From the NCBI GenBank assembly GCA_965655095.1, contig OZ296651.1, forward strand, positions 53,258,001 through 53,322,000: a DNA stretch of 64,000 nt. Reading direction: 5' to 3'. The notes beneath the pieces are model-generated. The model was not told where the DNA came from, searched no databases, and saw only the letters and a list, made by a program, of their open reading frames with translations. This stretch comes from Haplodiscus bocki (lineage: Eukaryota). Positions 9,621 through 62,250 of this stretch are shown here, in pieces. The first letter of the stretch is position 1. Each line of letters opens with the position of its first letter. The position numbers were made by a program, and so were the translations under genes.

Positions 9621-10085
9621 TCTTGTACTAACAAGGAAAACTTGCTCCAACGTTTTTCAGCCTAACCCTTACTAGTTTTTTCAAGTTCATTTTTCTCAAT
9701 CAAAACTACTGTTTTCGATTACTCTCCAGTAAATGAATAACTTGAAAGTCTCAAAATTTTAGTACAACTGACGGACAAATATCGACAACCGAGAAAGTAC
9801 TAAATTCATCTGACAAGGTCCAACAGAAGTCTTGAAAGGAACAATAATGCATTATCAATGTATGGTTGTCTACAAAGATGGAGAACCAATAATTGGAGGG
9901 ACAATAGCAGGTAATTTTAGAGGGCATGTTTTTGTAAGTTCAACGAAATTAGGAAATAGGAAAATCTATGTCCCTCACTGGAAATATAAACGATATCAGG
10001 TCGGTTCCAAGGCGCACACATTACCACTAAGTCAATCTGGGCCGGTTGGACCGGAACGAAAGTACGAAAATCTTCAAAAGCAACA
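9621..10085 (-). mobile_element. 3' LTR-like unit (~465 bp) directly downstream of BEL/Pao pol
   Basis: On the minus strand it begins TGTTGC right after a PPT-like GGGCTCGAATTA, ~110 bp past the pol stop, and ends ...GTACAAGA (decayed ...ACA). It aligns by eye over ~380 bp with 18230-18705. Confidence 0.6.
9970..10042 (-). other. tRNA-derived (Pol III A/B-box-like) segment inside the LTR; not a functional tRNA
   Basis: Minus strand: GCCCAGATTGACTTAGTGGTAATGTGTGCGCCTTGGAACCGACCTGATATCGTTTATATTTCCAGTGAGGGAC. The A box TGACTTAGTGG is good, the B box is decayed, and it is homologous to 18591-18662. Confidence 0.5.
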
Positions 10086-10194
10086 TAATTCGAGCCCAAA
10101 AGAATGCAAAAACTGTAGAAAGCAAAGACTGCGTGACGTTAAGATTATTTCAGAAACTCACAGAGACTAGAAATAAACCACATGAAGTGTTTCA

Positions 10195-13100
10195 GTCGGA
10201 TAAAAGAAACGGGGCGAGTTTTAGAAGCGGAAGGACAAGAATTCCGGACCATGTTTTCCATTCAGCTGAACCCACGACGGCGTCATTGCCGAAGTGTCAT
10301 TTCATGATTCGTGCTAGAAATTAAAGTCCTCCACGAACGGTTGAGTCTACAATCCAAACAAGACGGCTGGTTTTCGAGTCTCGTTCTCTGTAGTTGACCA
10401 CTATGATGGACGAATCATAATGAGAATGTACTCCTTCATTTATCTGGTCCAAATTGCACAGGAGTAGGCCTCTACGTGGACGTATTGTTTCACGTGATCG
10501 CAGACGCTTAGAAAGTGAAACGGTGAACTTGAACTCGATGATCCGAGAAGAAAAACGTTTGGAGTCAATGCCTGGAAGTCAGTTATACCTGAGCCTACTG
10601 GAACTAACGGACGAGAATTGAGGTTCTGCTCAACTCAACAAAAAGTTGTGTTGGGTGTTTCGTCAGTTTGGCGTCTGTTTTAAAAGATAGCGCAGAAATC
10701 ATGCTTCGAACTTCTCATAAAACTTCCTCGCGACCCACTATGATGTGGCGAACTGAGGGGGTTAATTTTCCAGAACATACACTTTTTTTACGTGAAGTGT
10801 CAACCCTAACATCTGGATCCGGCTTCGAATGTTTTAGAAAGCTGTTTTACTGGAAAAGGACATAGTCCTGTTGTTAGACCAAAAGACTGATGGAACGCCA
10901 CGATGTGAAGCAAATCTCTCAATCCCTATGACGCAAATTTCAGTGACCATTGATGGCAATACTTCAAAATGATCTGCACGGGGGTTTGACAGGTGAGATA
11001 AGTTTCCACCGCTTCTCAGTACACCGCTTGACGTCACGTAAAATGTTCCTCGGTTGTCAACTCCGGTGTTTGTGAATGGAGAACGGAATACTGAACGTTC
11101 ACGTGGAAGGTCTGCCATATATGGATTGACAACTTGAGATTCACGGTGACGTCACAAAACGCAATTAAGCAGAATGGATCTCCAAGTTGTTCAGAGTCAA
11201 ATATTCAGATGCTTTTGCTATATCAAGGCTCAGATATTCAACGCCTTGATGACAATATCTGTCGCGAAGTTGCCCAAGGTCAACCGACCAGCACGCTAAT
11301 TGCTGTCCGACAAGCCGGGTTGTTCTACATCAAGGTTTTTTCTCAAACTGCTTAGTTTTACGCATTTCACAAATGGAACCGCTGAGTCTTTTGGTCTATT
11401 GAAGATGGAAAAGTTAGGTACTTTTGAACACCTGCTGCTGAAGAGTTTCTCAAGAAGCATTGTTTCTCTGCGTTGAAGGGCCGATGTTGTATCTGAAAAA
11501 AAGTTTCTGCCTCTGTTCTACGATAAGTTCTTTCTTATCGGTGATTGACGCATTTGTTGTTCGGTTACCACTAATTTTTGGCAAGCCACACAAAATATGC
11601 ACCCCAGTGTGCAATAATTTTTCATATGAACTAGATTTTTGCCACTCGAAAAATAATACAGAAATGGTGACGACCACCGCGAACGCTTAAGCGTGGCAAT
11701 GTGTCCAACTTGGTTTGGTTTCCGGAGCTAGCTTGGTCAATTGATTCTTGCTTGAAACAATTCCAGGTGGTTTAACAGGCCAACTGGTTGATCCGAGAAA
11801 GTCGGGACCTTTCAACTAACTGTTTTGCAGAAGAGCACTAGCTGCAATACCACGTGTAGACGCGTTGGCCGGACTGTCAGTGGGTTGAACATGGTCGCGT
11901 TCATCTATTGTTTAAAAGTCAAGAAATTCAGCGACGTTGCTTGCGAAAAACGGGTTGTTCGTTATTAGAGTTTAGCCACTGATTGATGCTTGTGCTGTCG
12001 CTCCACAAAAAAGTGCTGTGAAAGTGCATCATAGAAGTGCCATGAGCTTCAACTCCAGGACTTGAAACCAGCATAACGGCTTGCAACTCCAGCTTTAAAA
12101 TTGCCAACGCTTCTATACGTTCAACACGTGCGTTGCTTAATACAAAGTGACGGTGGTTTAATCTGCTTCGAATATACTGCGGAGAGAAGCAACTGCACTG
12201 GAGACATTATGAGAGCGGTTGCCACATATTTGCTACACTAAACGGTGAATTTTTTGTCAAAGGAAGCTCAATCGGGTGACTATTGAATTCAGTGAAAGCA
12301 ACTCTTTGCTCCATTTGGAGAACCGTTGGACAAAATCATCGGGTTTTTCAGCGTCCTACTGCTGGCCACCGAGATTCCAGTTTTTTCTCACCAGTAAACG
12401 AAGATTCTACTGCATGGCTCTCTCTTCAAGGCCAACGGGGTCGAATAGGGCGGCACCAAACTCAGCAATGTTCGTTGCGTTTTCAACGTTTTAGGTTCAG
12501 CATTTGGTTTTCGACTTATGATTGAAGCGTTTTAGCAGCGACTGCACTTCAGACTCAAAACATGCGCAACGTCGTCACCGCTGATAAGTACTCTAACTAC
12601 TTTGACTTCCCTGTTTCTGTTGAAGTAGGTGACGGCTGACATTCTGTATCAAACCAAAATTACCTAAACGTAATATTCCGACGCAATGCTGGGCTTTTTG
12701 ATTTACTCTCTGAATATTTCCACAGGACTTTAAAAGACCGTCGATGTAATTTTTTTGTAGATGCTGCGAGCAACTTCGGGAACTTGTGCTGGATTTTCTG
12801 AGGCAACTCTCTGCAGCGCGTAGTTAGCGCATGTCGACGAATCTTTTGCGGCAAAAAATTGTCGAGTGTTTTCAGATGATGATACGTATAGTGCTGGGTC
12901 TTCCCACCACAAGAAACAAAGACACAGGTGGTCCATCGAAAAAACTCCGACTTGTGGGAACCTTCCCTCGGTGACCGTGAAGAGCGCGTATTGATGCTGC
13001 CGAAATTGATGAAGAACATGATTTTGATTTTGTAGTAACTATGGCCCTCTCAAAAGAACGGAATTCAACGAAAGCCATAGAACTTACGTACGCCGTTATA

Positions 13101-16100
13101 AACACGTTCCAAGTTTCCAAGTTTATGTGGGTGAAGAACGGAACGATGCGGCAGGTACCACTCGTGTGGGTTTTTTTGCACTGAAACAATGAAACTCTTC
13201 AACGAGTACGATGTAACTCTTCGAGAAACTTTTTTCAACTGTTTTTGATAGGTTACTTCCAAAGTCGGATCTTTCCCAAGACGGTATTCTGACAACTTCA
13301 ACTGTCAAAGAGCGGAGAAATCATTGTTTAGCAAGTTACCCTCATTATCGGCCCATAGCACACCGACGTAACAACGCGACTCATCGTGGTAAGCTGAATC
13401 TTCCAGAATGCGGAGTGTTTGTGGCCTGACTGCGGAGCAGAGATCGACAAGTTTGTTCTTTCCGTACGACTCTAAGTCGTCTCACTGACAGAGCTGATAG
13501 GCCAAGTCAGAGTCATTATCAGCTCAAGCAAGTGTCCTAAAACATGTGGACACTAGACCTGCAGCCGAAGGAAGCGACTTCATCAACACTCTTTTCAACG
13601 ATAGGCAGTTGGCAAACGGAGTATCTTTGCAGTCGGTGTCAGTAAACACCAGTAGATGGATGAGGCGGATTGAGTCTTGACCAAGTAACATTTCTCCATT
13701 GGCGTAGACGTACTCATTGAGTGTAAACGGCTGAAAAAGTCATCACTGCTGTTTAAGTTTGTTGACAAGCATGATGGATGGTGCCAATGTTGCGGTCTTT
13801 CCTCACGTAAGGCGTAATGTTGAAATTTGAACAGGTGTCACCCAAAACTAGGGGGTTCACTCGAGCACAACAATCTGGGTGTGGATGGTCTGCTGAGATT
13901 TATTACCTTAATACCTGGTACATGAGTTTCGTCGGAGCACCCTGTAGTTTGAGCCTTTTAGTCAGTTTCTCACAAATCCCAAAGTGACTGCAGGTTGAGT
14001 CACAAAAATTTAACTTGCTCAAAACAGTCCGAAGAATGCACGCCTACCGTTTACTTCCGCGATTTGCGGGAAGCCATTTACATTTGTACCGGAAGACATT
14101 CCGGAGCTTTCTGCTTCTTGATTACTATATACTGCAGCTGCCCTAACACGAGTTTTCATGCAATTGCTTTTCTGCTCAAATGATTTGTGTTGAAGGATGC
14201 GGTTTGCACCATGAAGCAGGGTGTTTTGAGATATCTTACAAACTTTTCTTTGCCATTTATACAAGGTATTGGCCATCGTCAGAAAAGATGTTGCCGCTGA
14301 AAGCAAAATAAACAATGTTTATGGGCTGCTACAGCTTTTGTTCGTCCGCTGGTTGTCTTTTCTGGGAAAACAGCATGTTTGGTTTGCATACCACAAAATA
14401 TGACGTTTTACTGAGGGATAATTTGTTCTTGTTAGCGGGACTACTCAGAAAATATGGTGCCCGGTTTCGTTCAGGTGGCTTTAGATGCACTGTTGTCAGC
14501 CGAAATGCCTTTGTTAAATGATCTTCGCATTCAATCTCGTCCTTGAGTCCTCTCCTTATCCAATCATTGGAGTCAGTCAGTTGCGTCGAAAATTGTGCAA
14601 GGGCAACGCTGCCTTCTTATTGAGCGTGAGCTTCTGGAAAGCTTAGTTGGGCAGTGGTGCACTTGACACATCGTATTTGTAGTTTAATGAACGAAATATA
14701 CCAAGTAAACTCGAAAATGTTCCTGAAAGAATGAATATATGGTTGCTCTTGTGCATTTTCACTGGTGATGAATTGTTTCATTTGTCCTGATGGGTAATAA
14801 TGACTGCTTGTGGTTGCTTATATTTACGCTCAAAAGTCTCCAAAGCATCTCTATAGATCAAACTGAAATATGCAAACTCAGCAATATGTTTTTGTTTTTC
14901 CTGTGACTAAAGTTTTGAAATAAGTCGGCTTGACATCATCCGTGAGTGCTGCCGAGTCAATGACGATCTTGAAATGGCCAAAGCATTTTCTCAATTTGAG
15001 AAGATCGCCAATAATTCGGGCCAATTACCTTTCGGGAAGGTCGTCTTTTTTGGTAGCAGCTACCAGCTGGACAAGGTCATTCGAAGAGACTAAAGCTGAG
15101 GAATCACTGTGCGTAAGGTCGGCAGATGGAAAGTTTTAAGGTGGCTTGAGGAAACTGATTCAACGGCAGTTGGCATGGAAATTAAGAGGGGCGTTGCTAG
15201 GCTTGGAGGAGGGACTACAGTAGTGAACGGTACCTGCATCAGTTATTGGAAAAACCAGCAAAGTTCTTTTCGTAGTCTGCTTTTTTTGATGAAACGTGTG
15301 TTGCAAAGCTATGGGCTGCTGAATATTGTGAGACTGAAACAGATTTCCGATGACTTGTTGCTTGTACCCGAAATTTCCAAACACCCAAGATTTGTAGAAT
15401 GTTGTTCGCAGGAGTTGCTGCAGTAAAAATTGTTTGCGGTGGGTAGGTTGGTTGCTCCCCGCCTATTGAGAGTGTGACACTTACAGAATGTGATGAAGCA
15501 TTTCTGGTTCTCCGAGATAAACTGACGGTCTACTGCTGAAGTTGTGGAATCTCGGTGCATCAGTTTTTGTTTGGTTTGCAACAGACGTTCGGATCTTGGT
15601 GCAACAACAAACACTGACGCTGCAGTAATAAAAAAAACTGAGTGGGTGCTGCAGGTGAAACTTCAGGTTGCATTGTTTGAGGTTGTGACTGTAAGAACAC
15701 TAACTCGTTTTTTGCCAGTGGCATTGGTGGTGGTTTGTCAATTCCTGTCGCAGCAGCTTGTGTTTCTTCCTCTGCTTCTGTATCACCGCCCAAAAGAAGC
15801 AGATCAAATTTTGACAGTGAGCCATGTACACACTGCTCTCACCGATTCCTCTCTGTGTCTTCATGCAATTTGGTTTGTGAGACTGGATGCAAAAACTCTT
15901 GACTAGCCTGAAAAGTCTTCCGTCTGTTCTTTTCCGTTCAGCTTTGTTTCGGCTAACCTCCTGTTTTCCCCAGAAACTTCTTCCATTTCAAGACTTTGCT
16001 TCTTATTAACAAAACGTAATGCTTTTCATTTTGTTTCTGAAATTCATTTTGTGTGTAATTCCTCGTGGCGATATTTGGCCAGCAAAAGTTCCTTTTCTCA

Positions 16101-16472
16101 TCAACTACTACACGTTCCGGAAATTGTTTTTGTTCAGCGGTAAATGTGATTTTTTGAAGACATTTAGAACTGAATTTCCTTGGGATACCGCGTGTTAATG
16201 CAATGCTAGGCTTGGCGGAAAAACTCTTCGATCGCGACAATTACGGTTTTCAACCAGTCTTCCAACCGATTTCTAACAGTTATTTTGTCGTTTTTTTCGA
16301 TGGTTTTGGCCAATACCGTTTGGGAAGTGCTGATTGATTTGTCCACACGCACGCGCCTATCAGGCACCTTGACGTTGCCCTGGATTCTACATTGCAGCTC
16401 GTTCATTTCTGTTTCGGGTGTTAGTGGATTCTCGAAAAGCTTAGTATCTTTGTCAAGAGGAGCTTTGGTCAT
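10195..16472 (-). mobile_element. BEL/Pao LTR retrotransposon internal region (gag-PR-RT-RNaseH-INT), pseudogenised
   Basis: Motifs in order: gag knuckle CKISQNTLLHGA (~14200); RT EWYLPHRSVLHPHKLG..RVYNG (~13100), FLWWEDP and AKDSSTCANYALQR (~12850); integrase MADLPRER..PFTNTGVD..G.FYV and RFASHRGVPSVFWSNN (~10850-11118); DUF5641-type end LVWIVD...LARIMK.HFGNDAVVGSAE.KT.SG.L..PLLKLAP (~10200-10370). Many stops and frameshifts. Confidence 0.92.
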
Positions 16473-17449
16473 TTCAGTTCTCTCTTAGTGTTAAAAAATG
16501 CTTTACTAACTTACTAACCAAAAAAGTTCACTGAGACAGGACAGGAACAGTTCAAGTGCTAGCAGTAGCTGAAAGTGTAGCAAACTTTGACCAGAATCAG
16601 GCAATTAAGCCCGGACACCGTCAAAAGGGACAAAGGTTATTTAATTTTCAACTGTACAATTACGTTGATGCACCGATCAAAACAAGATTTTTAAGACAAC
16701 GAAACACTGTTGAGCAGACTTCACAGTCAAAAAAGAGTTCTGTGAGGTTTTTTGTACGCGCTTCGAAAGGCGTTTAGGTGGGATTTTTCTGAACATGACG
16801 ATCAAATCTTTCTGTTGATTAACAAGTACTAAGAGTGGTTTCCTTTCTTGCTCGGGGCTGTTGTGTACTGCTGGCTTTGCATTGCCGCGAAACATCAAAA
16901 ATTCTCTCTTTCTAGCAAAAAATCAGGTCTTTTGCAGTAATCATAACTCTTGTCGTTTCAAAAAATCAAAAACGTATGAGGTACGATCGTGTTGACAGTA
17001 CATCAGAGCTCGGAGTTGGTCTTCACGACAAATCAGTTTTCTTAGGTTCGCAAAAATGCTAATGGGAAAGTTGCCGTTGCCTGCGTGTAGAAAAATTGAG
17101 TTTATCAGCAAATTGAACCAATATTCCAGCTCGATTTCATCTTTCAACTCTTCTTAAGGAAGATTTTGAACCATGTTATAAGAGTTTTTCGCACTTTACT
17201 TCAATCCAAGTGAAGTGAGAATGTAGTTATTTATCAAAGTTTTCCTCCTTTTTTTGAAGTTTTTATCAAGCTGAGCGTTTCAAGGCCGCGATGTATTCTC
17301 TTTCCACCGATAATGAACACCACTCAATATATTTCCGTTTTTTGATAACATTTATGACAAAACTTTTAAGGGGTGGGGCTCCCTATCAGTTTTACCCAAA
17401 CTAATTTATTGTTCAAACTACCTTTTTGAGAGTTTCACCATTTTCTGTA

Positions 17450-18200
17450 AAGAGACTATCCAGTTTTGGACATTATTTTTCAACTCGTACACTCTCGGAT
17501 TAATCGCGGGGAACGGGTTGCACCTGAACACGAAGAAGGGGTGATGTCACAATATAAGACTGTTGTTGAGCTTTCGGGGCAACTCGGGTTGATTTTTATT
17601 TTCCGATAAATTGGATCAAGGAAGACCACTTTGACAAATCCGTGGCCGAAATTACTTTGCTCCTCGCTTTTGTTTTCTTTAAGTTCTTCATTGAAAGCCC
17701 AAGTTGGCGAACTTTCTGGGCCACAAGACTTTTTCTTAGAGTATCGTATATAGCATGGAGATATATAAACAACTGAAACATACCACGATCTGCTTCGGAC
17801 TTCAACAATGATATGAGGAAAAGTTTGTTTTGATTTCTGTATCCACTGTACATTTTCTTGAGGTCAGTATCAGTTGCAATCATTTTCAGTCTGTCTACAG
17901 ATTTCCCACTCAAAAAGTTGACTTTTCCCGGCGGGTTTCCCTGCTAGTGAGCAATGAAATCAATCCAAAATCTGTAAACTGAAAGTATTCGATCAGTTAT
18001 GGCGAGTCATAACTTTTTTGCTTTTTCAGCTGAAAGAGAACTCAACCTCTCATCATGAAATATTCACCGGCGTGAATTGTCTAATAAAGATTAATAACTT
18101 TCTGCAAGAACTTCCGTTTTTGGAGCAGCAAGGAAATAAGAAATGAGAGCGTTGTCGTGAAAGCAGAAACGTCAGACACAGGAAAGAAATTTTTTTCTGG
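17450..18200 (-). mobile_element. Ty3/Gypsy pol fragment (RNase H end and integrase)
   Basis: ORF 17596-17913 contains LRKSLVAQKVRQLGLSMKNLKKTKARSKV (cf. LRxxILxxLHxGHxGIxKMKxxARSYV). Downstream VLYCDITPSSCSG resembles LLxYRxTPHSxTG. Confidence 0.45.
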
Positions 18201-18229
18201 TCATTAGCATACCGATCAAAACTCATCAT

Positions 18230-18705
18230 TCTTATCTCTCGGGGGATAGAACGGCGATTTCGACAGATTGGGGTCTACTTTCTGAGTTTAACACAACCAT
18301 TAGGCTATAAACTACTTCTCTGTGGCCAACTTTTTTTGATGACACTCCGTTCAACCAATAACGTAAAATTCTCAACAAGGTAATAACACGGACTAACAAA
18401 TATAGGTGGCCGAAAAGGTACCAAAATCATCTGCTAAAATCAAACAGAGGTTTCAAAAGAACAACGATGCGTCATCAATGTATGAATGTCTACAAATATG
18501 GAGAAACAATAATCGGAAAGGCAATAGCATGTAATTTTAGAGAGTTTTCTATTAGTAAACGTAGAGAAAATAGGAATTAGGAAAAACTTTGTCCCTCACT
18601 CGGAATTGAACTGGTATCAGGTCGGTTGTAACGCGAACACGCTACTGCTAAACCATTCTGGCCCTGTTCGACCGGAACGAAAGCATAATTTTTGCATACG
18701 CAATA
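18230..18705 (-). mobile_element. LTR-like unit (~476 bp), diverged relative of 9621-10085
   Basis: Same orientation and collinear similarity, e.g. tcaatgtatg..tgtctacaaa.atggaga..caataat and gtccctcact.g.aa...tatcaggtcggtt...gaccggaacgaaag. The minus strand starts TATTGC and ends GATAAGA (decayed TG...CA). No TSD seen. Confidence 0.6.
18591..18662 (-). other. tRNA(His)-like segment with Pol III A and B boxes inside the LTR-like unit
   Basis: Minus strand: GCCAGAATGGTTTAGCAGTAGCGTGTTCGCGTTACAACCGACCTGATACCAGTTCAATTCCGAGTGAGGGAC. It is collinear with the metazoan tRNA-His pattern (GCCGTGATCGTATAGTGG...GCGTTGTGGCCG...GGTTCGAATCCGAGTCACGGC). The stems do not pair fully. Confidence 0.6.
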
Positions 18706-19399
18706 ACTACTTCACTAAGAAATTTTGGATCGTATTACTACGGTCTACTGAAAACTGAACTCTTTACTAGCTTGAATTTTTCTTGAGTGACGGGGGATTG
18801 CATGTTGCATAGTTTTTGTGAGAATTGAATTGCCTGGCCATCTTTTCGGAAATACGAAGAATTCTCAGTTGCGTTTTCTTAAGAATTAGTTTTCTCAAAA
18901 ACTACTGGTCAGATTGGAACACTTTGGTATTTAATTGATACCATACAAAACAGTGAATCTGCTGATTGGAATTTTTAAAATATATCTCATTTTTTGCCAA
19001 AAGTAACATCAGAAAATGGAGAAACAATTTTTAACCTTCAAATTTCGTGGAAATTGTTTTGAAAATTTTTCGTTGGACAGAGAATATAAACTAGTCGTTC
19101 AAGTATTCGCGAAAGGATGATTCTGCTGAACGACAAGGAATTCTGCGTCCGGGTTTTTTCCCAACTTAACGCATATCCAATTGGAAATTCAAAAATGTTT
19201 TCTCTTGAGTATGTGTTCCGGAAAACATTCGATCGAGCTGCCCCTGTCCATTACAATCTCAAAAAAATGGGGGAGAAAAAAGTACTAAAAGACGGCGGAA
19301 AAGCAACCCCTTTTCTTCTTGACTATCGAGCCAGATATCATATATTGGTTTTTGAATTTGGAGACTTTTTATAATTCTTTAACATAAATTTTTCGCATT

Positions 19400-53942: not shown

Positions 53943-54429
53943 TGATGTAGTTCAAAAGAGAATAATGTGATGCAACACAAGCGCCTCAATGGTAAGGGTG
54001 ACTGGTGTTAGCTGATGATGTAAACTACAGGTGTGAAAAAAAGCTCCAATGAGAAGCGCTGAGTTTATCACGTGACTATTTTTCGTCCGCATAAAAGCCT
54101 CAAACACTCGGTGGTAACAGTTTCATCAAAATTGCGCTCCGCCTCTGTAACGTACACTACTCCGTTTTACGCGGCTGCAGTCACAACGTGACGCAGACAA
54201 TCAACGCCTTAAGGTTATTACGAAACGACTACTACTACTACCGTAGATGACAATGAAATCACGTCCACCTCACTGTCAACAAACAAATTTAAGTATTAGC
54301 GTAACTTTACCATTTCCTTTTAAAGGAACAGCAGAACAGAAAAAGCACACACATAAACTACGACATACACATAATCGAACTACGACACACATAAACCACG
54401 AGGGAATTCGTTACTAAACTACGTCTCCG

Positions 54430-57400
54430 CCATGAATCAGAAACTGAACAAATGGAACTGGCAACTGAGCTGATTTTCCGGCAACTCCAAAGTTTATGCG
54501 AGCCATTGGCAAATCAAATTGAGTTGGATACCACTGGAAAAGGCGACGTTAACGGTTCAAGACGTGATGAAACATCCGCAAGTTCAGAGGAAAGCTGGTA
54601 GGGAACGGTAATAGGAGTCAACCCGAACCCTCGGAGGCGAAACCGAGCACCGACTTTGGACAACATCATGTACTTTGCCGCGGCCAGACCGAGGACAGCA
54701 AAAACCAACCTTACATGACGCAATTGATGATTGCAATCACCACCGTCCTCAGCTGCATCCAGAGGACAACACGAAAACGCAAGCTTCTCCGAAACCACGT
54801 ACCGACATTCCAAGGAAAAAAACAGTATAGCGAGTTCGAACACCTCCGACTGAATCAAATACGACCATTCTATCACAAAATCACAGAAAAAGAGAAGCTC
54901 CACTTTTCAACCAGCCTGCTTCCAGAGCAAAGCAAGCGAATTCTGGAAACAACCAAAGTAACCCAAGGCAAACTTTACTCGACATACTGACAATGTTCCA
55001 CAGAGAGCACCCCTGCGGCAGCTTCATGGAATTGTCCAGGTACCAATAGGATGAACTATAGTACAACCGCCACCGCGAATTATATTTGAGTTTCAGAAAC
55101 CCATCAAATGAAACCGCGAAACAAGCCGTATACCCAAAAACTAAAGAATATGTCAAAGCTCTCTCCATCAGCAAAATACAGTTGCCATCCAAATTGACCC
55201 CAGTGTAGCCTGAAAACAAGACGCAACAGTAGACCAAAGCAGAAATATCCAAAAAACAAATCAGTACCAACAATTGAAGGGTACCCATACTCTACAACCT
55301 TTCAATGAAAAGTTTTTTGGTACGGGCGGACTTCAAAATCAAAAGCTAACCCGTGCGAACAAGTACCAGAAACGGAAATTCAGTGAACATGTTCGCAATG
55401 GAACAAAAAAAGCCGCCAAACAATGGATTTTGCAGCCTGCAAGTGAAAAATAGCCCATTTTGAACGACGAAACAAAGATTTGGGAATCCAACAGCAACAT
55501 CGCACACCAGTTCAACAGGCGCAAGACAGATCGAACTACATCATGAAGATGGTTTCTCAATTTTGCGGACGAACAGGACACTCTTTGCTCACTTGTAGGC
55601 ACCGTAATATGAATACCAACGCACACAGCAGCATACCCCACCAGAGACAAAATCCAGATGAGAACCGAGCTTTTATAAAAGAAATCAAACGTGCACATAA
55701 ACGATAGTTCTAATTGAACTAACGCACTGAAGCAATCAGTGACGCATCCCATTCTGAGAAGAGGCGGTTCAATCCGATTCTTCAAACAAATAAAACCCAC
55801 GTTATCCAAAATCCAAACGTGAACGACCGCCATATGTCAAATATAGTTCATGTAATTATTCAACTACTGACACTACGAAAGAACTGAAAGAAAATGAAAA
55901 ACCAAAATGATAAAGGCTTTGGAAATTCGGCAACCTTTGTCTGGCCACAATACCTAAAAAACGTTACTATGAAACGAGTCTCAAGCCAACAATCATCCTT
56001 GTGCACGCAACAGCAGAACAAGGGAATTACATACAAATGAATGAAACACTTAGGACAGCAATGGTATAAATGACGACTCATAACTCAATCAAGCTTTCAA
56101 CCTTGAGTGTCAAACAACCGCCAAACCTGATTACAATGAGGCACGGAACATTCCACTATTGGAGAGAACGACATCGTCTGGAAAGACACAAACACCACCA
56201 GTTGTTGACTGCTTCGGCTCAATTGAAACAACGTGACCGACATATGTATAGACACCTGGACTTTCAAAATACGAAAAAAAAGCTCCACAAGGTACTGGTT
56301 CCATTGGGAGCGCCATTTGTGAATCGGAATTCCATCGTTTCCTAGTCGCCCAACCTACGCTTCTCATACAAGATGTGACTGTACCAGACAAAAACGTTCA
56401 GAGTTCAAATGGCCAACGAAAGCACGATCCCCCTCACAAAAAGCTCCCATGTTTGTTTTTCCACAGTCGGAAAACAATTTGAGGAGACCTTCAAGATCTA
56501 GCCAACAATGGGTAGCATTTTGAAAACAATGTGTTTTTTCGAGGAGTACTCAGTGACGTTGGACAACCTCAACCGTCCGATATATTTCCTCGGTGTATCA
56601 CTCCAACTAGGTCAAACCAACGGAAAAGGAAACTGTGACTTATGGTCCAAGCTCCCAGCTGCACAGAGGATGGTGGTACTGCCCTATCAGCCACTTATGT
56701 TCTCAGTGTGCAACAACGCTGAAATTGTTTCAGACACTAGTACACCCGAACAAACAACAACCATCACTAAGTATGAAGCCTTACTGTTTACTTCTGCAAG
56801 CTCGAAAAGTTAGTGATCAACCCACATGGTAACGCCCACATGTTCAACGCTGGTGCAATCGCCCAACTTCACTGCACTGGCACACAACTAGGCAAGACCT
56901 GTGGAATCCAATGCACCGGCGATTTTGAGCCCTAAGACACTTCACCCCAAAAAGATTACAGCCAAAGTAAACCAAACAATCCATGATGAACCCAGAACGT
57001 CCAACTGGAAAAAAACACACCGTAAACTTGTCAAAACACTCAGACGCTCAACCCACTATAACGACGAATCTCTGACGCCATTTTCACCCTAAGAAAACAG
57101 AAACATCCGGATCCCAAAACGTCAGTTGAGCAGCGAAAGACATTCTCGGTGGAAACAAATCGAATTTTTCATAACTCACAACTAGGCAATGACAAAAAAC
57201 CACAACTACAACGTTTATTGGTCAAATTTTATAACATTTTATCACTTCACTGTACAGATAAGAGTGTTAACACTGAGTTCAAGAATAGGCATACACCTAG
57301 GCACAACAGCACGCTGTACGCCCACAGTCTGTCTGAACCAATCAACCTCAAAGACGGAACACTAGTCGAACTGGCATTAATGGAATAATTTGATGTTTTG

Positions 57401-59800
57401 ACAACGTTGCCTCTCAGCGAAAATTGTTCACCCATTATGACACAGCGAAAACCTAGTTGTCGACTCGAGCTGCTAGTGAATTAACGGCAGATTGACAACC
57501 TCATTAAACAGAAATACACAGAACATGATCATCTGGTAACACCCATAGCAGACTTTGCACTTTGCACATTACATGGCAGAGAAGGTGTTTTTTTAAGCTT
57601 GATTGCTCACAAGCGTGTGATTGCCTTTAGATGGCAGCTGAGCAAGCAATCCATCTCTTGTCGTTCAATTTTGTTTCTAGCAATTTTGCAGGAAAACGTC
57701 TCGTTTAAGTGATATACTGTTCCCTAACTCCATTCTTAATCGACAGTTTTTTGTTCAGGCGGTCAAAAATTGAAGTTTTGGGAAAGACGATTAGAGCTAA
57801 TGGAGTCAGTCCTGTATAAAAATCAACTTTTCTTTCAAAAATCGCAAAACATCTGTCTCAGCCTAATCACTGCAGCAATGCCTAGGTTTTGTTAAATTTT
57901 ACAGACCGTATCTAACTAAATTAGTTGAAAACCCTTTCCAATTTCAAACTCTTACAAACGGACGCTTTGTTTGAACTCACTGACTCGCTAGGTGACACGA
58001 TGCTTGAGATCAACAGAAACTTAGCCAAGGCAATTACAGTGTTCATTAGATGAATTCTCTTGGAGAGGCAGTTAGTCATAATGTGTGAACCCACTGAACA
58101 AGCAGCCGGTTACAGCCTCGTGATGGAAAACTTCAAGAAACCAGCCGGTGGTTCGATCATATGCATCGGTTGCATTTGGTTTTCGTAGAGCCATAAATAG
58201 CCCAATGTCAGTCGTTATGTAAGCTAACGAAGTCTTATCCTTGCAGTTCATTGTTGTTGAGTCTGGCCACATCTTGTGAAACGTCAGAAAACCCACGGTG
58301 GTAATGATTGATAACAGGGCTCTAACTAAAAAACTTTAGACAAAACAGGTTCCACTGAAATAATGGAATTCTTTCGACCAAACATTGCAGTTTAGTTTTG
58401 TTTAACTACATGAACCATGTACGATAATCGTGTTCTTGATCATGCATCTCGTTCAGACGGAAAACGCTAGCATTTCATCAAACTCGAATTCACGGTTAGC
58501 GTACCTGTGTACCGCATTGACAATTGGGCTCGCCCTAACACGCGCAAGAAAAACCAGGAACATGCGCCAAAATTGAACGAGCTGACACCTGAAACACAAC
58601 AGACATTCGGTGCCGTAAAGAAAATGCTCTCGCAGAACCGGGGTGTGACGGAACAGCACCTTGTGCAACGCAAACGCAACCAGCAGCGCTGTTGTCAAAC
58701 AGAACATCACGTGATCAATGTCAACACTTCATCATGTTTCAACCTCGCAACTCACTACTGTAACCACAATTAGGTCAAGTAAGCACGCAGGGGACACTAA
58801 TTTTGGACATTTCTAGTTTAACGACCCCAACATACAACAAATGATACGCTGCTTAGGTGCTTACGAGCTGCATCCGAACAACAGAAAAAATTACCAATCA
58901 GCTGTGACGAAAAATTAACAAAAATTAACGTATTGCTCTGTTCGTCAACGACCCACTATATCGTAAGTTCTCATACCTTTTAGACAAGGAAACAAACAAA
59001 CTAGTTGTGAAACCAGAAACAGCAATGGAGAAATTCGTGAAGTCAGTGCATTGAGACCCTATGCAGAGACACCCTGGTTCTTCTGAAAGACTGCTAGCCC
59101 ATCGCCAACAGTTTCAATCACCCAAAAACGCTGAAAAACATCAACGCGTCGTAAACAACTGCAACAATTCTATTCAGGCCAAATTTTACACCACAAGTAA
59201 ACTGAAACCGCCGTTATAACGGATCTACAACACTTCCGACGGACAAGCCAATATCAAGTCTGAAATCGGTCTGATCGGAAAATTGCCTCTTTTAAACGGT
59301 TGCACACACATCCTAACTGCAACTGACATCTTTTAGCGCTACCTGTTTGTCGTTGCATTAGAACACCATTTTTTTCATCCATGGCGAAATTTCTCAGGCA
59401 GATATTCACACACCCAGCGTTTGTGCCCTGCCCTATACTTGGCGGCAAGGTCTGCACGTTTAGTTCAAACGTTCAAATTGATCCCGTGGAAGTCTCAGGT
59501 ACCGACATTGAACATGCTACCACTAAGCACACTCAGAAAATGTATTACGTGTTTGATGTGCTTCCCATCAACAAACACCTAAAACACTACCATCTTTTCT
59601 ACACAACCCATATCTTTCTCTTTAGCTGAGCAACAACTCATCATTTAGTACCATTCCACAGAACATACCTCAACTCAGCATCCATTACGCCACTATCAAG
59701 ACGGCACCCTTCTTAGAAGTCAAAATTCTAGATAATAGCTCCGTAACAACCCTGCTCCGAAAAATTAGCTGGAGTACTTAATTGTGCATTTGATCGAAAC
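54430..59800 (+). mobile_element. Ty3/Gypsy LTR retrotransposon internal region (gag-PR-RT-RNaseH-INT), pseudogenised
   Basis: RVQMANEST (protease region, ~56400); LVELALME*FDVLTTLPLSENCSPIMTQRKPSCRLELLVN*RQID and FKLDCSQA..CL*MA (RT, 57360-57690); SYASVAFG and KPTVVMIDN (RNase H); ILTATDIF*RYLF and EHATTKHTQ (integrase). Confidence 0.88.
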
Positions 59801-60999
59801 ACAAGCCCTTTCAAAATTTTTTCTCACTGAACCTAATTAACGAAGAGAGCCTCACTCAAACGTTTGATGGCACACTCCTTGATCATGCTGTTGTTGTTTG
59901 TTCAATCGCCTCTTTACATTGCCCGCCGGTCCCCTCGGGATTTGACAAAATGTCAATCATTCAGTTCAATTTACAAAGAACCAACACACGACATCTTTAT
60001 TTTGCATCCCGTGCGAAGTTCTTCTCACAAAAAGAATGACTGACAATCTAAACGCTGTGAAAGTGAAACTTACCCCACTAGATGGTACAATGTTTAAACT
60101 CTGCTCTTCTGCTGTTTGAAACAACAGCTCATTCGACTTTTCCTTTAGCACGCACCATACACACACTTATTATTGTGACGTATTTAAGACTCAGTAATCA
60201 TAGCCTAAACCTTTCACAAAGCAACTTGTTCCACCAGCAGATGCAAAAAGATTGGGCTTATAAAAGTCTGACTCTCAAACGAGTCCCCCAAAACGCCGCA
60301 GCACATTTCGCACCCCCTGTTGATTAACAAGTTAAACTTTTGATATCGAGACCTCTTCAACTACGTTTTCCATCTGTTTTTCTAAAGATACTACTGCTAC
60401 TTCACAGCTGTGCAAGTTCCCAAAGTACTCTGTGACAAATGTTACATAAACAACAGTGTGGGTTAATGAAAGAACTATTTTACAGATAGTGAGGTACCCA
60501 CTGCTTTACCGCAAAAACCAACCAAAAACAAGAAATGAGGTGTACTATCCATCACTGAACTTCAAATTTAAATATAACATAATTGCTCCCTTCGTGCTTC
60601 ATCCTTCCCCATCCGCAAGATGTGTCCGTCTTCACACTGTCCAGTTTCAACTCATCTTTTTCCTTTCTCGATGAATTTTCCAACTCTCTCGCGACCCAAA
60701 CAAAGTTTCGTCCCAATACGTCTCATTTCAGGCTACCTACTCCTCTTTTTAGTATTTTTTCTCCAGCTCCTCAAAGTACCGCGAACGCGGACCTGCACTC
60801 AAAGAACACCATTCAAGGGATAAAGAAATCAATTGACAGAGTTGCCAACGAATTCTCTCACCAATGTTTTCTCTCAACTGCTTTTTCCGCCAAATCTAAT
60901 GTAAATTGTTTTCTCGTTCTTGTTTTTTTTTTCATTTTCGCCTTCTATCTGCTCGAAACAACTTCTAGTGGTTTGCAATACGTAATACAATAAATATTT

Positions 61000-62250
61000 A
61001 CGGTTAATTAAAAAAAACAGTCAGAACATATATGAGAGAAGCAAAGAACATTTATGTATATAAAAATATGCAGTCAGGGTCAATCACTGTGTGTCTACAC
61101 ACGATCATTGAGTTCCTTTCAATCTGCGTCATCAGCGTCTCATCAGTTCAATTCAAATAACCTGCGAAGTCTGAGTCCAACAAAAACAACCTCCATCAAT
61201 GTCTCACTAGCATCAGTTGAGACTGGAATCGCGACCTCTTCGTTGTCTCCTTGCGTTTCGAGGGATCCCTCGACCTCTCTTTAGTCTGACGCTTCAACGG
61301 ACTTGTTTTTCTGCTTCCGCCTCGAGCTTGACATCAGTTCCGAAGTATAGGTATCCGGAAATCACGGCTCTCTGAAAAGCCATGACTTGAACTTGTTGCT
61401 AATGTAGCCCTCTTTTAGTGCACAAGAAGTGCACAAAATTACTCACACACAGACACTTCCAACCACGAAAGTTTTCGCCTCGGTACAAACAACCTCTTGC
61501 AGAAAGCCACTGATTCCTGTTTTCCTTTACAACTGAAGTCGACATGTCAGCAGAGGCTAGTTGACCCTAAATAGAGAACCGATTACAAAAACAATGCAAC
61601 ACAGAAGATCTCTCTTTCAAGTTTAGCACCTCTGCGATCACAGAATTGAAACAGCCGAGTGTGTAGTTCTTCTTTCCCGCAGTCAACAACAGCACCTCAA
61701 CCATCAGTCTCAATTCCGCTGATCCGTTCCACTTGTCCGATCCGAGCTAAAACCACTTCAGATCTCCAACAATTTCGACATTGTTGCCATAGCCCCACCG
61801 TATTCTCAATATCTTGACAAAAACATCATGGCGTTTTGGCACATTCCGAGACTCCAACTCGGTAATAACGCCAAATTCCGGGCGGTAGACATTCAGTGGA
61901 ACACTTCCTCATTGAGACGATCTGCTCTTCCCTCCTGGTTGATCTGCAGCATCAGAAGTCACAACATCACGCTGCTGGACAGAAGTGTTCGCATGGTTGG
62001 AACTAACCCCACCACCAAATGCCGCAAGAGACTCAAGGCAACAGTGAAGAACTGCGTTTTTGTCTATTGACTGAGCGCCACAAAGAAGCGTTCCAAATGC
62101 GCTTCCACAGCGCTACTTGCAAGATGATGCTAGGAAAAGTGTCAAATCACATTTTGAACCTCTTCTGGGCCCGTTTCTTGAATTGGTCTCCGTACAACAT
62201 TTTTCAAGATTTCCGACAACTTCAAGATTCATGCGGAGCTTCTTCTTCCT
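61000..62250 (-). mobile_element. Ty3/Gypsy integrase-region remnant
   Basis: Decayed minus-strand frames include a C..C knuckle end (~62200) and DKWNGSAE…LLLTAGKR (cf. WDxxLP…LxxGRE, ~61680-61740). Confidence 0.45.

What the first reader, a model, noticed from the sequence alone, without database searches (positions are those of the whole stretch)
9621..10085. BEL/Pao-adjacent LTR that embeds a tRNA-derived Pol III cassette
The unit starting TGTTGC just after the PPT-like sequence of the BEL/Pao pol contains, ~45 bp from its 5' end and in sense orientation, a ~73-nt tRNA-shaped segment with an A box. The second copy (18230-18705) has the cassette at the same position, so it is part of the LTR family rather than a chance SINE insertion. 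Plant Cassandra elements carry 5S rRNA Pol III promoters in their LTRs; I know of no tRNA-based equivalent in animal BEL/Pao LTRs. It could drive Pol III transcription, recruit TFIIIC as an insulator, or supply a self-encoded primer.
Basis: partly seen in the sequence, partly recalled or inferred. Interest (0 to 1): 0.8.

Follow-up and report, generated by a model that had tools for sequence, protein, structure and literature searches.

The report
tRNA-derived block inside BEL/Pao LTRs
Both end-repeats of an old, broken BEL/Pao retrotransposon carry a decayed piece of a tRNA gene. Younger relatives keep its Pol III 'B box' intact, so a feature recently described in miniature elements (Helenus) also occurs in full-length ones.

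Summary
The structure is real. A degraded 8,996-bp BEL/Pao provirus lies on the minus strand (18705->9710). It has 375/376-bp TG..CA LTRs, a 5-bp target duplication (GTAGT), a PBS and a PPT.

About 43 nt into each LTR, in sense, lies a ~73-nt tRNA-related block. Universal tRNA residues and the A/B boxes sit at canonical spacing, and a T-run follows. It is not a tRNA: ARAGORN and Rfam find nothing, a tRNA covariance model built here gives at most 12.6 bits against 37-58 for true tRNAs, and the cloverleaf stems do not pair.

The block is part of the LTR in all 51 aligned copies and is not a free SINE. Within this dead family it decays like the rest of the LTR, and both window copies have damaged boxes.

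Eight other BEL/Pao lineages were examined, four of them in another species and some of them young. Including the window's family, the B box is exact in 5 of 9 lineages. It is the most conserved stretch of the LTR.

The most likely role is a DNA-level TFIIIC/Pol III site in U3. It is not a primer and not the genomic promoter.

The closest known elements are the Helenus TRIMs (Kojima 2024). This scan reached the same reading before on other DNA (s1-376473).

The parts
18706..18710 (-). Target-site duplication, 5' side (GTAGT)
   Evidence: Read directly from the sequence. It is identical to the 5 bp after the 3' LTR. Sister elements have their own 5-bp TSDs: TAAAT in L031 and GATAT in L032.
18331..18705 (-). 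5' LTR, 375 bp (TATTGC...AAAAAAA, decayed from TGTTGC...AAAACA)
   Evidence: nhmmer with the LTR profile covers 18706-18326, E 1e-96. Boundaries come from the 51-copy alignment and the motif positions.
18591..18663 (-). tRNA-derived block in the 5' LTR. A-box remnant TGGTTTAGCAG at 18655-18645; B-box remnant AGTTCAATTCC at 18612-18602; T5 run follows.
   Evidence: The block profile hits 18665-18577, E 1.8e-21. Motifs were located.
18315..18330 (-). Primer-binding site, decayed (GTTGGCCACAGAGAAG; family form TGGTGGCCATAGAGAGG)
   Evidence: The same motif follows the 5' LTR in at least 15 family copies, and in L107 and L108 from another species.
10102..18314 (-). Internal region: degraded gag-pol of a BEL/Pao element. 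No frame longer than 120 aa.
   Evidence: GC is raised to 0.43-0.45. It is collinear at 70-72% with L031, L032 and L033, whose ORFs hit DUF1759, Peptidase_A17 (Pao) and DUF5641. The window's own ORF pieces gave no Pfam hit.
10086..10101 (-). PPT-like stretch before the 3' LTR (TTTTGGGCTCGAATTA; relatives read TTGGGCCCGGAGGA)
   Evidence: Conserved in the 3' LTR copies and absent before the 5' LTR copies. The same motif occurs in sister families and in another species.
9710..10085 (-).
   Evidence: The LTR profile covers 10086-9707, E 2e-85. Genome matches to this unit typically span query positions 24-376.
9971..10043 (-). tRNA-derived block in the 3' LTR. A box TGACTTAGTGG at 10034-10024 (10/11); decayed B box at 9991-9981 (7/11); TTTT follows.
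   Evidence: The block profile hits 10045-9954, E 2.3e-18. No tRNA was found by ARAGORN or Rfam.
9902..9922 (-). Conserved promoter-like block CTCTAAAATTAC-CTGCTATTG (also in the 5' LTR from 18542)
   Evidence: It is the best-conserved part of the LTR within the family (0.77). The TTGCTAT part is the second most conserved window across lineages. Its function is inferred, not shown.
9705..9709 (-). Target-site duplication, 3' side (GTAGT)

Best explanation
The finding is the 3' LTR of an ancient, dead BEL/Pao LTR retrotransposon. Its partner at 18705-18331 is the 5' LTR.

The U3 part of the LTR contains a relic of a tRNA gene or of a tRNA-derived SINE head. This relic entered an ancestral LTR and has since been inherited as part of the LTR by a whole clade of full-length BEL/Pao elements in at least two species.

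What has been kept is the DNA-level Pol III promoter skeleton, above all the B box (GGTTCGATTCC), and not a foldable tRNA.

Most likely mechanism (inferred, not shown): in active copies the block is a TFIIIC-binding, tDNA-like site. It lies about 60-80 bp upstream of the LTR's conserved core-promoter-like block. It may also give a short, roughly 90-110-nt Pol III transcript that ends at the following T-run. It would act on the element's chromatin or promoter environment as an insulator or opener.

It is not the promoter of the 9-kb genomic RNA, and it does not supply the primer. The two copies in this window have mutated boxes and are decaying neutrally.
For: Anatomy of the window element:
- TSD, LTR ends, PBS and PPT are all present.
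- Direct-repeat pairs 7-8.7 kb apart recur at other places in the genome. L031-L033 have homologous internal regions that carry Pao domains.

The block is part of the LTR:
- It is in register in 51 copies.
- The block alone finds only about 49 genomic candidates. Of the 29 fetched, nearly all extend into the LTR.

tRNA origin:
- T8, A14, G18G19, A21, U33, R37 and G53-T54-T55-C56-R57-A58-C61 are in register, and G19 to G53 is 34 nt (read).
- The block profile aligns collinearly to this genome's tRNAs, best to tRNA-Lys, E 0.006.
- The weak hits of the tRNA covariance model fall on the block, in sense and over the full model length. The young L106 copy scores 18.8 bits, E 8e-4.

Selection on the B box:
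- Eight other lineages have the block at the same LTR offset. These are L101-L104 in this genome, at 53-58% aa identity in DUF5641, and L106, L107, L108 and L110 in another species.
- The B box is exact in 5 of 9 lineages and within 1 mismatch in 8 of 9. Shuffles give means of 0.01 and 0.39.
- It is the most conserved 11-nt window of the first 200 nt of the LTR: 0.82 against a mean of 0.31.

DNA motif rather than RNA fold:
- With the cloverleaf imposed, 51.9% of cells pair against 50.1% in shuffles. There is no covariation. Only G52-C62 and G53-C61 are kept.

Not a primer:
- The family PBS is unrelated to the block.
- The L101 family's PBS is the exact complement of the tRNA-Lys(UUU) 3' end.
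Against: - There is no transcript or binding data. No RNA run holds the sequence.
- Within the window's family the block is no better conserved than the rest of the LTR: 0.70 against 0.69. The between/within-element divergence ratio is 1.38 against 1.44.
- Only 4 of 51 family copies keep both boxes.
- Rfam RF00005 and ARAGORN are silent on every copy, the young ones included.
- A boxes are exact in only 3 of 9 lineages. L109's LTR shows no clear block.
- T-runs are common in AT-rich LTRs, so the 'terminator' is weak evidence.
- The multi-lineage alignment is anchored by MAFFT on the most similar words. This inflates the apparent peak at the B box.
Confidence: 0.6

Rival explanations
1. Neutral passenger. 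A tRNA or SINE2 fragment landed once in an ancestral LTR and is carried along with no role. The B box looks conserved only because the lineages are related and the alignment anchors on it.
For: - There is no excess conservation within the family.
- Box decay is widespread: the A box survives in 14 of 51 copies and the full B box in 9 of 51.
- Covariance-model scores are weak.
- The cloverleaf is not maintained.
Against: - Lineages whose LTRs otherwise barely align (0.1-0.5 identity outside the block) still keep an exact or near-exact 11-mer at the same offset. This holds in two species, including young copies with 96.5-98% identical LTRs.
- U3 normally turns over fast.
Confidence: 0.25
2. RNA-level element. 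Because U3 is part of the 3' end of the genomic RNA, the block acts as a tRNA-like structure (mascRNA-like or T-arm mimic) in processing, packaging or priming.
For: - Several lineages can form a hairpin around the TTCGATT loop. L101 has an 8-bp stem, and L108 has a 5-bp anticodon-like stem and 5/7 acceptor pairs (read).
- There is a weak Rfam mascRNA-menRNA hit on L108: 15.3 bits, E 0.87.
Against: - The cloverleaf pairs fare no better than shuffled ones and do not covary.
- In the young L107 copy only the two B-box pairs can form.
- The Rfam hit is at noise level.
- Cleavage at a tRNA-like structure in U3 would remove R, which strand transfer needs (established retroviral mechanism).
- The PBS does not match the block.
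Confidence: 0.08
3. Chance resemblance. The block is not tRNA-derived, and the motif serves some other factor or none.
For: - No tRNA call comes from ARAGORN or Rfam anywhere.
- ARAGORN with relaxed thresholds does no better than on shuffled copies until the 70% threshold.
Against: - Twelve universal tRNA positions are in register, at the canonical 34-nt G19-G53 spacing.
- The anticodon-loop-like CTTTGAA is in the right place.
- The tRNA model's weak hits fall repeatedly on the same block, in the same orientation.
- L106's D-arm matches this genome's tRNA-Lys at 15 of 18 positions (read).
- The same motif set defines Helenus (PMC10886601).
Confidence: 0.07

Closest known systems
Helenus (TRIMp3) non-autonomous LTR retrotransposons, Kojima 2024 (PMC10886601)
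   Same: - There is a tRNA-like sequence inside both LTRs.
- Conservation centres on box A (TRGCY..YGG) and box B (GGTTC).
- It is usually not a functional tRNA.
- The PBS and PPT are ordinary.
- The proposed origin is a SINE2 or tRNA insertion into an LTR.
   Different: - Helenus elements are 311-1263 bp and non-coding. Pol III is thought to transcribe them whole.
- Animal Helenus make 4-bp TSDs and are linked to Gypsy.
- Here the LTRs flank about 8 kb of BEL/Pao gag-pol, the TSD is 5 bp, and a T-run follows the block. Pol III therefore cannot make the genomic RNA.
- The paper argued that autonomous partners should not share such LTRs.
Cassandra TRIMs of plants (5S rRNA-derived Pol III promoter in the LTRs)
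   Same: A small-RNA gene relic with an internal Pol III promoter sits in both LTRs.
   Different: Cassandra is 5S-derived, not tRNA-derived. It is a plant element, non-autonomous and short, and its Pol III transcripts have been shown (as cited in PMC10886601).
tRNA-derived SINEs (SINE2)
   Same: It has a degenerate tRNA head that keeps the A and B boxes but has lost the acceptor and anticodon pairing.
   Different: - There are no free-standing copies, no LINE-derived tail and no high copy number.
- The roughly 49 genomic candidates to the block lie within LTRs.
tDNA / ETC (extra-TFIIIC) sites that act as chromatin boundaries (established knowledge from yeast and mammals)
   Same: The B box is the best-kept part, and the A box is often poor. 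This is the signature of TFIIIC binding without a need for a functional tRNA.
   Different: There are no binding data here, and boundary activity is inferred only. Known ETC sites and tDNAs are host loci, not parts of a retrotransposon LTR.

Membership tests
BEL/Pao LTR retrotransposon | Paired LTRs with TG..CA ends flanked by a short (4-6 bp) target duplication | tested here: met
   The family LTR reads TGTTGC...AAAACA. The TSD is GTAGT, 5 bp. L031 and L032 have the TSDs TAAAT and GATAT, and L106 has CGCAT.
BEL/Pao LTR retrotransposon | PBS after the 5' LTR and PPT before the 3' LTR | tested here: met
   PBS-like at 18330-18315; the family motif occurs in at least 15 copies. PPT-like at 10101-10086.
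BEL/Pao LTR retrotransposon | Pao-type gag-pol (DUF1759, Peptidase_A17/Pao, DUF5641) | tested here: met
   The domains are found in L031-L033, whose internal regions are collinear with the window's. The window's own short ORF pieces gave no Pfam hit, so this is met through relatives.
tRNA gene (Rfam RF00005) | Cloverleaf fold, with a score at or near the family threshold (29 bits) | tested here: not met
   No RF00005 hit at E<=10 on narrow ranges. ARAGORN finds none. The tRNA model built here gives at most 12.6 bits for the window's family and 18.8 bits for L106, against 37-58 bits for true tRNAs. The stems are not paired.
tRNA-derived Pol III promoter module | Box A (TRGCNNAGNGG) and box B (GGTTCRANNCC) in sense, 30-60 nt apart | tested here: inconclusive
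   Met in some copies: both boxes in 4 of 51 family copies, and exactly in L031, L107 and L108. Not met in either window copy, which have 1-2 A-box and 1-4 B-box mismatches.
Helenus / TRIMp3 | Miniature, non-coding element (about 0.3-1.3 kb) between the LTRs | tested here: not met
   The element is 8,996 bp with gag-pol remnants. LTR pairs elsewhere are 4.2-10 kb apart and none is short.
Helenus / TRIMp3 | tRNA-like sequence in the LTR, conserved around boxes A and B | tested here: met
Helenus / TRIMp3 | Animal members make 4-bp TSDs (Gypsy-type integrase) | tested here: not met
   The TSDs are 5 bp in four elements.
SINE2 | Free-standing short copies with a tail, independent of LTRs | tested here: not met
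   Searches with the block alone return only LTR copies, about 49 candidates. One caveat: the genome search skips very common words.
Functional Pol III unit / TFIIIC site | Pol III transcript or TFIIIC occupancy | not testable with these tools
   No RNA runs were found. The four runs that hold the sequence behave as DNA.

The most novel reading that the evidence does not exclude
A clade of autonomous BEL/Pao retrotransposons keeps a working TFIIIC-binding, tDNA-like element in U3. It serves as a built-in chromatin boundary or opener, or as a short Pol III unit, for a Pol II-driven element. This clade would also be the kind of source from which Helenus-type Pol III TRIMs arise.
Probability: 0.35. 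Interest if true: 0.65.

Novelty: new variant of a known kind. Interest (0 to 1): 0.45.

Why it matters
LTRs that carry small-RNA-gene relics were known only from miniature, non-coding elements: Cassandra, Helenus and Ajax. In those, the relic is thought to be the promoter of the whole element.

Here the same kind of relic sits in full-length, protein-coding BEL/Pao elements that Pol III cannot transcribe. Even so, its B box is the best-kept part of the LTR across lineages and across two species. That points to a different use of the Pol III machinery by a Pol II-driven retroelement, most simply TFIIIC recruitment. It also offers a plausible parent stock for TRIMp3 elements.

Such LTRs will also seed tRNA-like false positives and possible TFIIIC sites across the host genome.

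The window copy itself is a dead relic. The interest lies in the clade, not in this locus.

Tried and rejected
- ARAGORN at default and relaxed thresholds on the window, 34 loci and 51 LTR copies: no tRNA. Relaxed runs did no better than shuffles until the 70% threshold.
- Rfam at gathering and E-value thresholds: no tRNA anywhere. Only noise-level hits appeared, including mascRNA at E 0.87.
- Hammerhead ribozyme or Penelope pseudo-LTR idea: considered from the CTGAT..GAAA motifs and dropped. No Rfam hammerhead hit was found, and real TSD, PBS and PPT are present.
- Pfam on the window's own ORF pieces: nothing. Relatives were used instead.
- Source isotype: tRNA-Gln was suspected from the CTTTGAA loop. 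This genome's tRNA-Gln genes were fetched and do not score best. The weak best matches are to tRNA-Lys. The isotype remains open.
- Self-primer idea: rejected.
- Excess conservation of the block within the family: not found.
- Expression: no RNA run holds the sequence. The laid runs are DNA, so they showed only copy number and LTR ends.
Both were done in other ways.

Full report
**1. What is at the coordinates**

The unit is on the minus strand. It starts TGTTGC at 10085, directly after a PPT-like stretch (10101-10086), and ends ...AAAACA at 9710, a length of 376 bp. The partner runs 18705-18331 (375 bp, its ends decayed to TATTGC...AAAAAAA). A PBS-like site, GTTGGCCACAGAGAAG, follows it at 18330-18315. 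The same 5 bp, GTAGT, lie at 18710-18706 and 9709-9705. The whole element is therefore an 8,996-bp provirus with a 5-bp target duplication.

The ends (9621, 18230) overshoot by 89 and 101 bp. The two LTRs are only about 75% identical, and the internal region has no open frame above 120 aa. The element is old and dead.

**2. It is a BEL/Pao LTR family**

The genome (1.5 Gb; the window is C4:53,258,001-53,322,000) holds at least 40 matches to the unit, most of them spanning query positions 24-376. Several lie in direct pairs 7-8.7 kb apart. Five such pairs were fetched. All show direct repeats of 190-370 bp at 75-84% identity.

Three of them (L031-L033) have internal regions collinear with the window's at 70-72%. 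Their ORFs hit DUF1759, Peptidase_A17 (Pao) and DUF5641. L031 and L032 have their own 5-bp TSDs, TAAAT and GATAT. The window's own ORF pieces are too decayed for Pfam.

An alignment of 51 non-redundant LTR copies has sharp edges at TGTTGC and AAAACA: mean pairwise identity is about 0.7 inside and about 0.3 outside. At least 15 copies are followed by the PBS TGGTGGCCATAGAGAGG.

**3. The tRNA-related block**

The block lies at LTR positions ~43-115 in every copy, in sense. A well-preserved copy (L031) reads TGGCTTAGCGG (an exact A box), then 32 nt, then GGTTCAATTCC (an exact B box), then a T7 run.

In register with a tRNA are T8, A14, G18G19, A21, U33, R37 and G53-T54-T55-C56-R57-A58-C61. The G19-G53 distance is the canonical 34 nt, and an anticodon-loop-like CTTTGAA is in the right place.

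It is nevertheless not a tRNA:
- ARAGORN finds nothing in the window, in 34 loci or in the 51 copies. At relaxed thresholds it does no better than on shuffles.
- Rfam gives no RF00005 hit at the gathering threshold or at E<=10, even on 251-701-nt ranges.
- I built a tRNA covariance model from this genome's Lys, Arg and Thr genes. It scores heterologous true tRNAs at 56-58 bits (Gln) and 36.8 bits (Gly). The family's blocks score at most 12.6 bits (E 0.14-1.6). Those weak hits do fall on the block, in sense and over the full model length.

A profile of the 51 blocks aligns collinearly to tRNAs, best to tRNA-Lys, but only weakly (E 0.006).

Among the 51 copies:

| Feature kept | Copies of 51 |
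|---|---|
| A box | 14 |
| GGTTC | 26 |
| Full B box | 9 |
| Both boxes | 4 |
| T4 run after the block | 49 |

None of these motifs occurs elsewhere in the LTR. Neither window copy keeps both boxes.

**4. Not a SINE, not a primer, no constraint after insertion**

Searching the genome with the block alone returns about 10 and about 49 candidates. Of the 29 that were fetched, nearly all extend into the LTR.

The PBS is unrelated to the block's 3' end.

Within the family the block is as conserved as the rest of the LTR: 0.70 against 0.69. Within-element LTR divergence is about 0.21-0.22 and between-element divergence about 0.29-0.32. The ratio is 1.38 for the block and 1.44 for the rest. The family went through one old burst and has decayed neutrally since.

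**5. The block is a clade feature, and its B box is under selection**

A DUF5641 piece finds 150 scored BEL/Pao matches in the genome. Among them is a family with 2137-aa open frames at several places.

All four show the same layout:
- the PPT GGGCCCGGAGGA, then TGTTG or TGTCG;
- after about 50-110 nt, a collinear block with TAGCGGTAGCG-like and GGTTCGATTCC-like motifs;
- a T-run in three of the four;
- in L102-L104, the conserved ...CTTGCTATC block.

A gag search found relatives in ENA assemblies. Contigs from ERZ25074608 gave four more elements:

| Locus | LTRs | Other features | Block |
|---|---|---|---|
| L106 | 394 bp, 98% identical | TSD CGCAT | B box GGTTCGATTCC; 18.8 bits, E 8e-4 |
| L107 | 373 bp, 96.5% identical | same PBS and PPT as the window's family | exact A and B boxes |
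| L108 | 5' LTR only | same PBS | exact A and B boxes |
| L110 | LTR start uncertain | none noted | GGTTCGATCCC, then T8 |

L107's 4.1-kb flank has no long match in the window's genome, so this is another species. L109 shows no clear block.

Over nine lineages the B box is exact in 5 and within one mismatch in 8. Dinucleotide shuffles give means of 0.01 and 0.39, and none of 300 shuffles reaches the observed counts. In six lineages it sits at LTR offset 87-100. It is the most conserved 11-nt window of the first 200 nt of the LTR: 0.82, against 0.66 for the next best (TTGCTAT) and a mean of 0.31.

When a cloverleaf is imposed on the same alignment, 51.9% of cells pair against 50.1 +/- 2.0% in shuffles. 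There is no covariation, and only G52-C62 and G53-C61, which are part of the B box, are kept. Rfam and ARAGORN stay silent on the young copies too.

What is conserved is therefore a DNA motif, not an RNA fold.

**6. Mechanism**

Shown:
- the anatomy of the element;
- inheritance of the block with the LTR;
- B-box conservation across lineages;
- absence of a tRNA fold;
- a PBS that uses another tRNA. In the L101 family the loose ends of DNA contigs give TGGCGCCCCACAAGGGAC, the exact complement of the 3' end plus CCA of this genome's tRNA-Lys(UUU).

Inferred: the block binds TFIIIC in active copies and perhaps supports a short Pol III transcript. It acts on the LTR's chromatin or on its Pol II promoter, which lies about 60-80 bp downstream.

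It cannot drive the genomic RNA. A T-run follows the block, the element is 9 kb long, and Pol III processivity is limited (the argument made in PMC10886601).

No RNA data exist to test any of this.

**7. Comparison with the known**

Kojima 2024 (PMC10886601) described Helenus, TRIMs with tRNA-like LTR sequence in fungi, plants and six animal phyla. Their conservation follows the same box pattern: TRGCY..YGG and GGTTC. The paper noted that 'not a few' Repbase LTRs contain tRNA-like parts.

Animal Helenus make 4-bp TSDs and are tied to Gypsy. The paper argued that autonomous partners must use Pol II and should not share such LTRs.

The present case fails the TRIM and the 4-bp tests and meets the box test. 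It is a new variant, an autonomous BEL/Pao clade, of a known kind.

Further literature searches found nothing on BEL/Pao LTRs with tRNA-like parts.

This scan's notes hold an earlier follow-up on another piece of this genome with the same reading (s1-376473). I saw that note after I had reached this interpretation and had found the paper, and I re-tested its claims here.

**8. Verdict**

The locus itself is a dead relic. The clade-level B-box conservation is the interesting part, and it remains without functional data.

Natural copies and profiles were used instead.

Noticed in passing
G000 C7:23.68-23.78 Mb, C4:107.93-108.14 Mb, C11:32.11-32.18 Mb, C5:31.75-32.15 Mb (loci L036-L065, L095-L100): There are very large tandem arrays of near-identical tRNA genes: Arg-TCG, Lys-TTT, Thr and Gln. 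The tRNA-Gln 3' half alone gives 254 pattern matches. Many array members carry point changes, including anticodon changes.
   Followed up: partly
L101 (G000 C4:79961900-79963250) and the places listed: A young BEL/Pao family has 2137-aa open frames at several places. Its LTR is 665 bp (L101 1319->655). LTR depth is 12-24x that of the unique flank in four DNA runs. Its PBS is the exact complement of the host tRNA-Lys(UUU) 3' end.
   Followed up: partly
L085 / L086 (G000 C11:63.94 and 63.95 Mb): Two stretches 9.9 kb apart are identical over 1,081 bp, including the flanks of a solo LTR. This is a segmental duplication or an assembly duplicate, not an LTR pair.
   Followed up: yes
L035:1121-2342: The 5' LTR of this family member is interrupted by a roughly 1.2-kb array of ~25-bp tandem repeats, which also has inverted copies. 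The LTR end and the PBS resume at about 2454.
   Followed up: no
L106:17389-17469 and 17647-17727: Two tRNA-like genes lie 258 bp apart, each with 10 extra nt after the anticodon (a possible intron). They score 39.6 and 36.3 bits with the tRNA model built here, and ARAGORN cannot assign an isotype.
   Followed up: no
L110:1-2901: In the other species' contig, an ORF with the Pfam family Monjiviricetes_fusion follows directly after a Ty3/Gypsy pol. It may be an env-bearing Gypsy element.
   Followed up: no
window 54000-62000: A stretch with GC 0.42-0.43 has strong negative GC skew and positive AT skew, unlike its surroundings. It is probably another retroelement. Other first-reader notes exist near 50-54 kb.
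   Followed up: no
window 9832-10170 (+): A 112-aa ORF runs antisense through the 3' LTR. The equivalent frame in the 5' LTR copy is stopped early, so it is most likely a chance ORF (read).
   Followed up: partly
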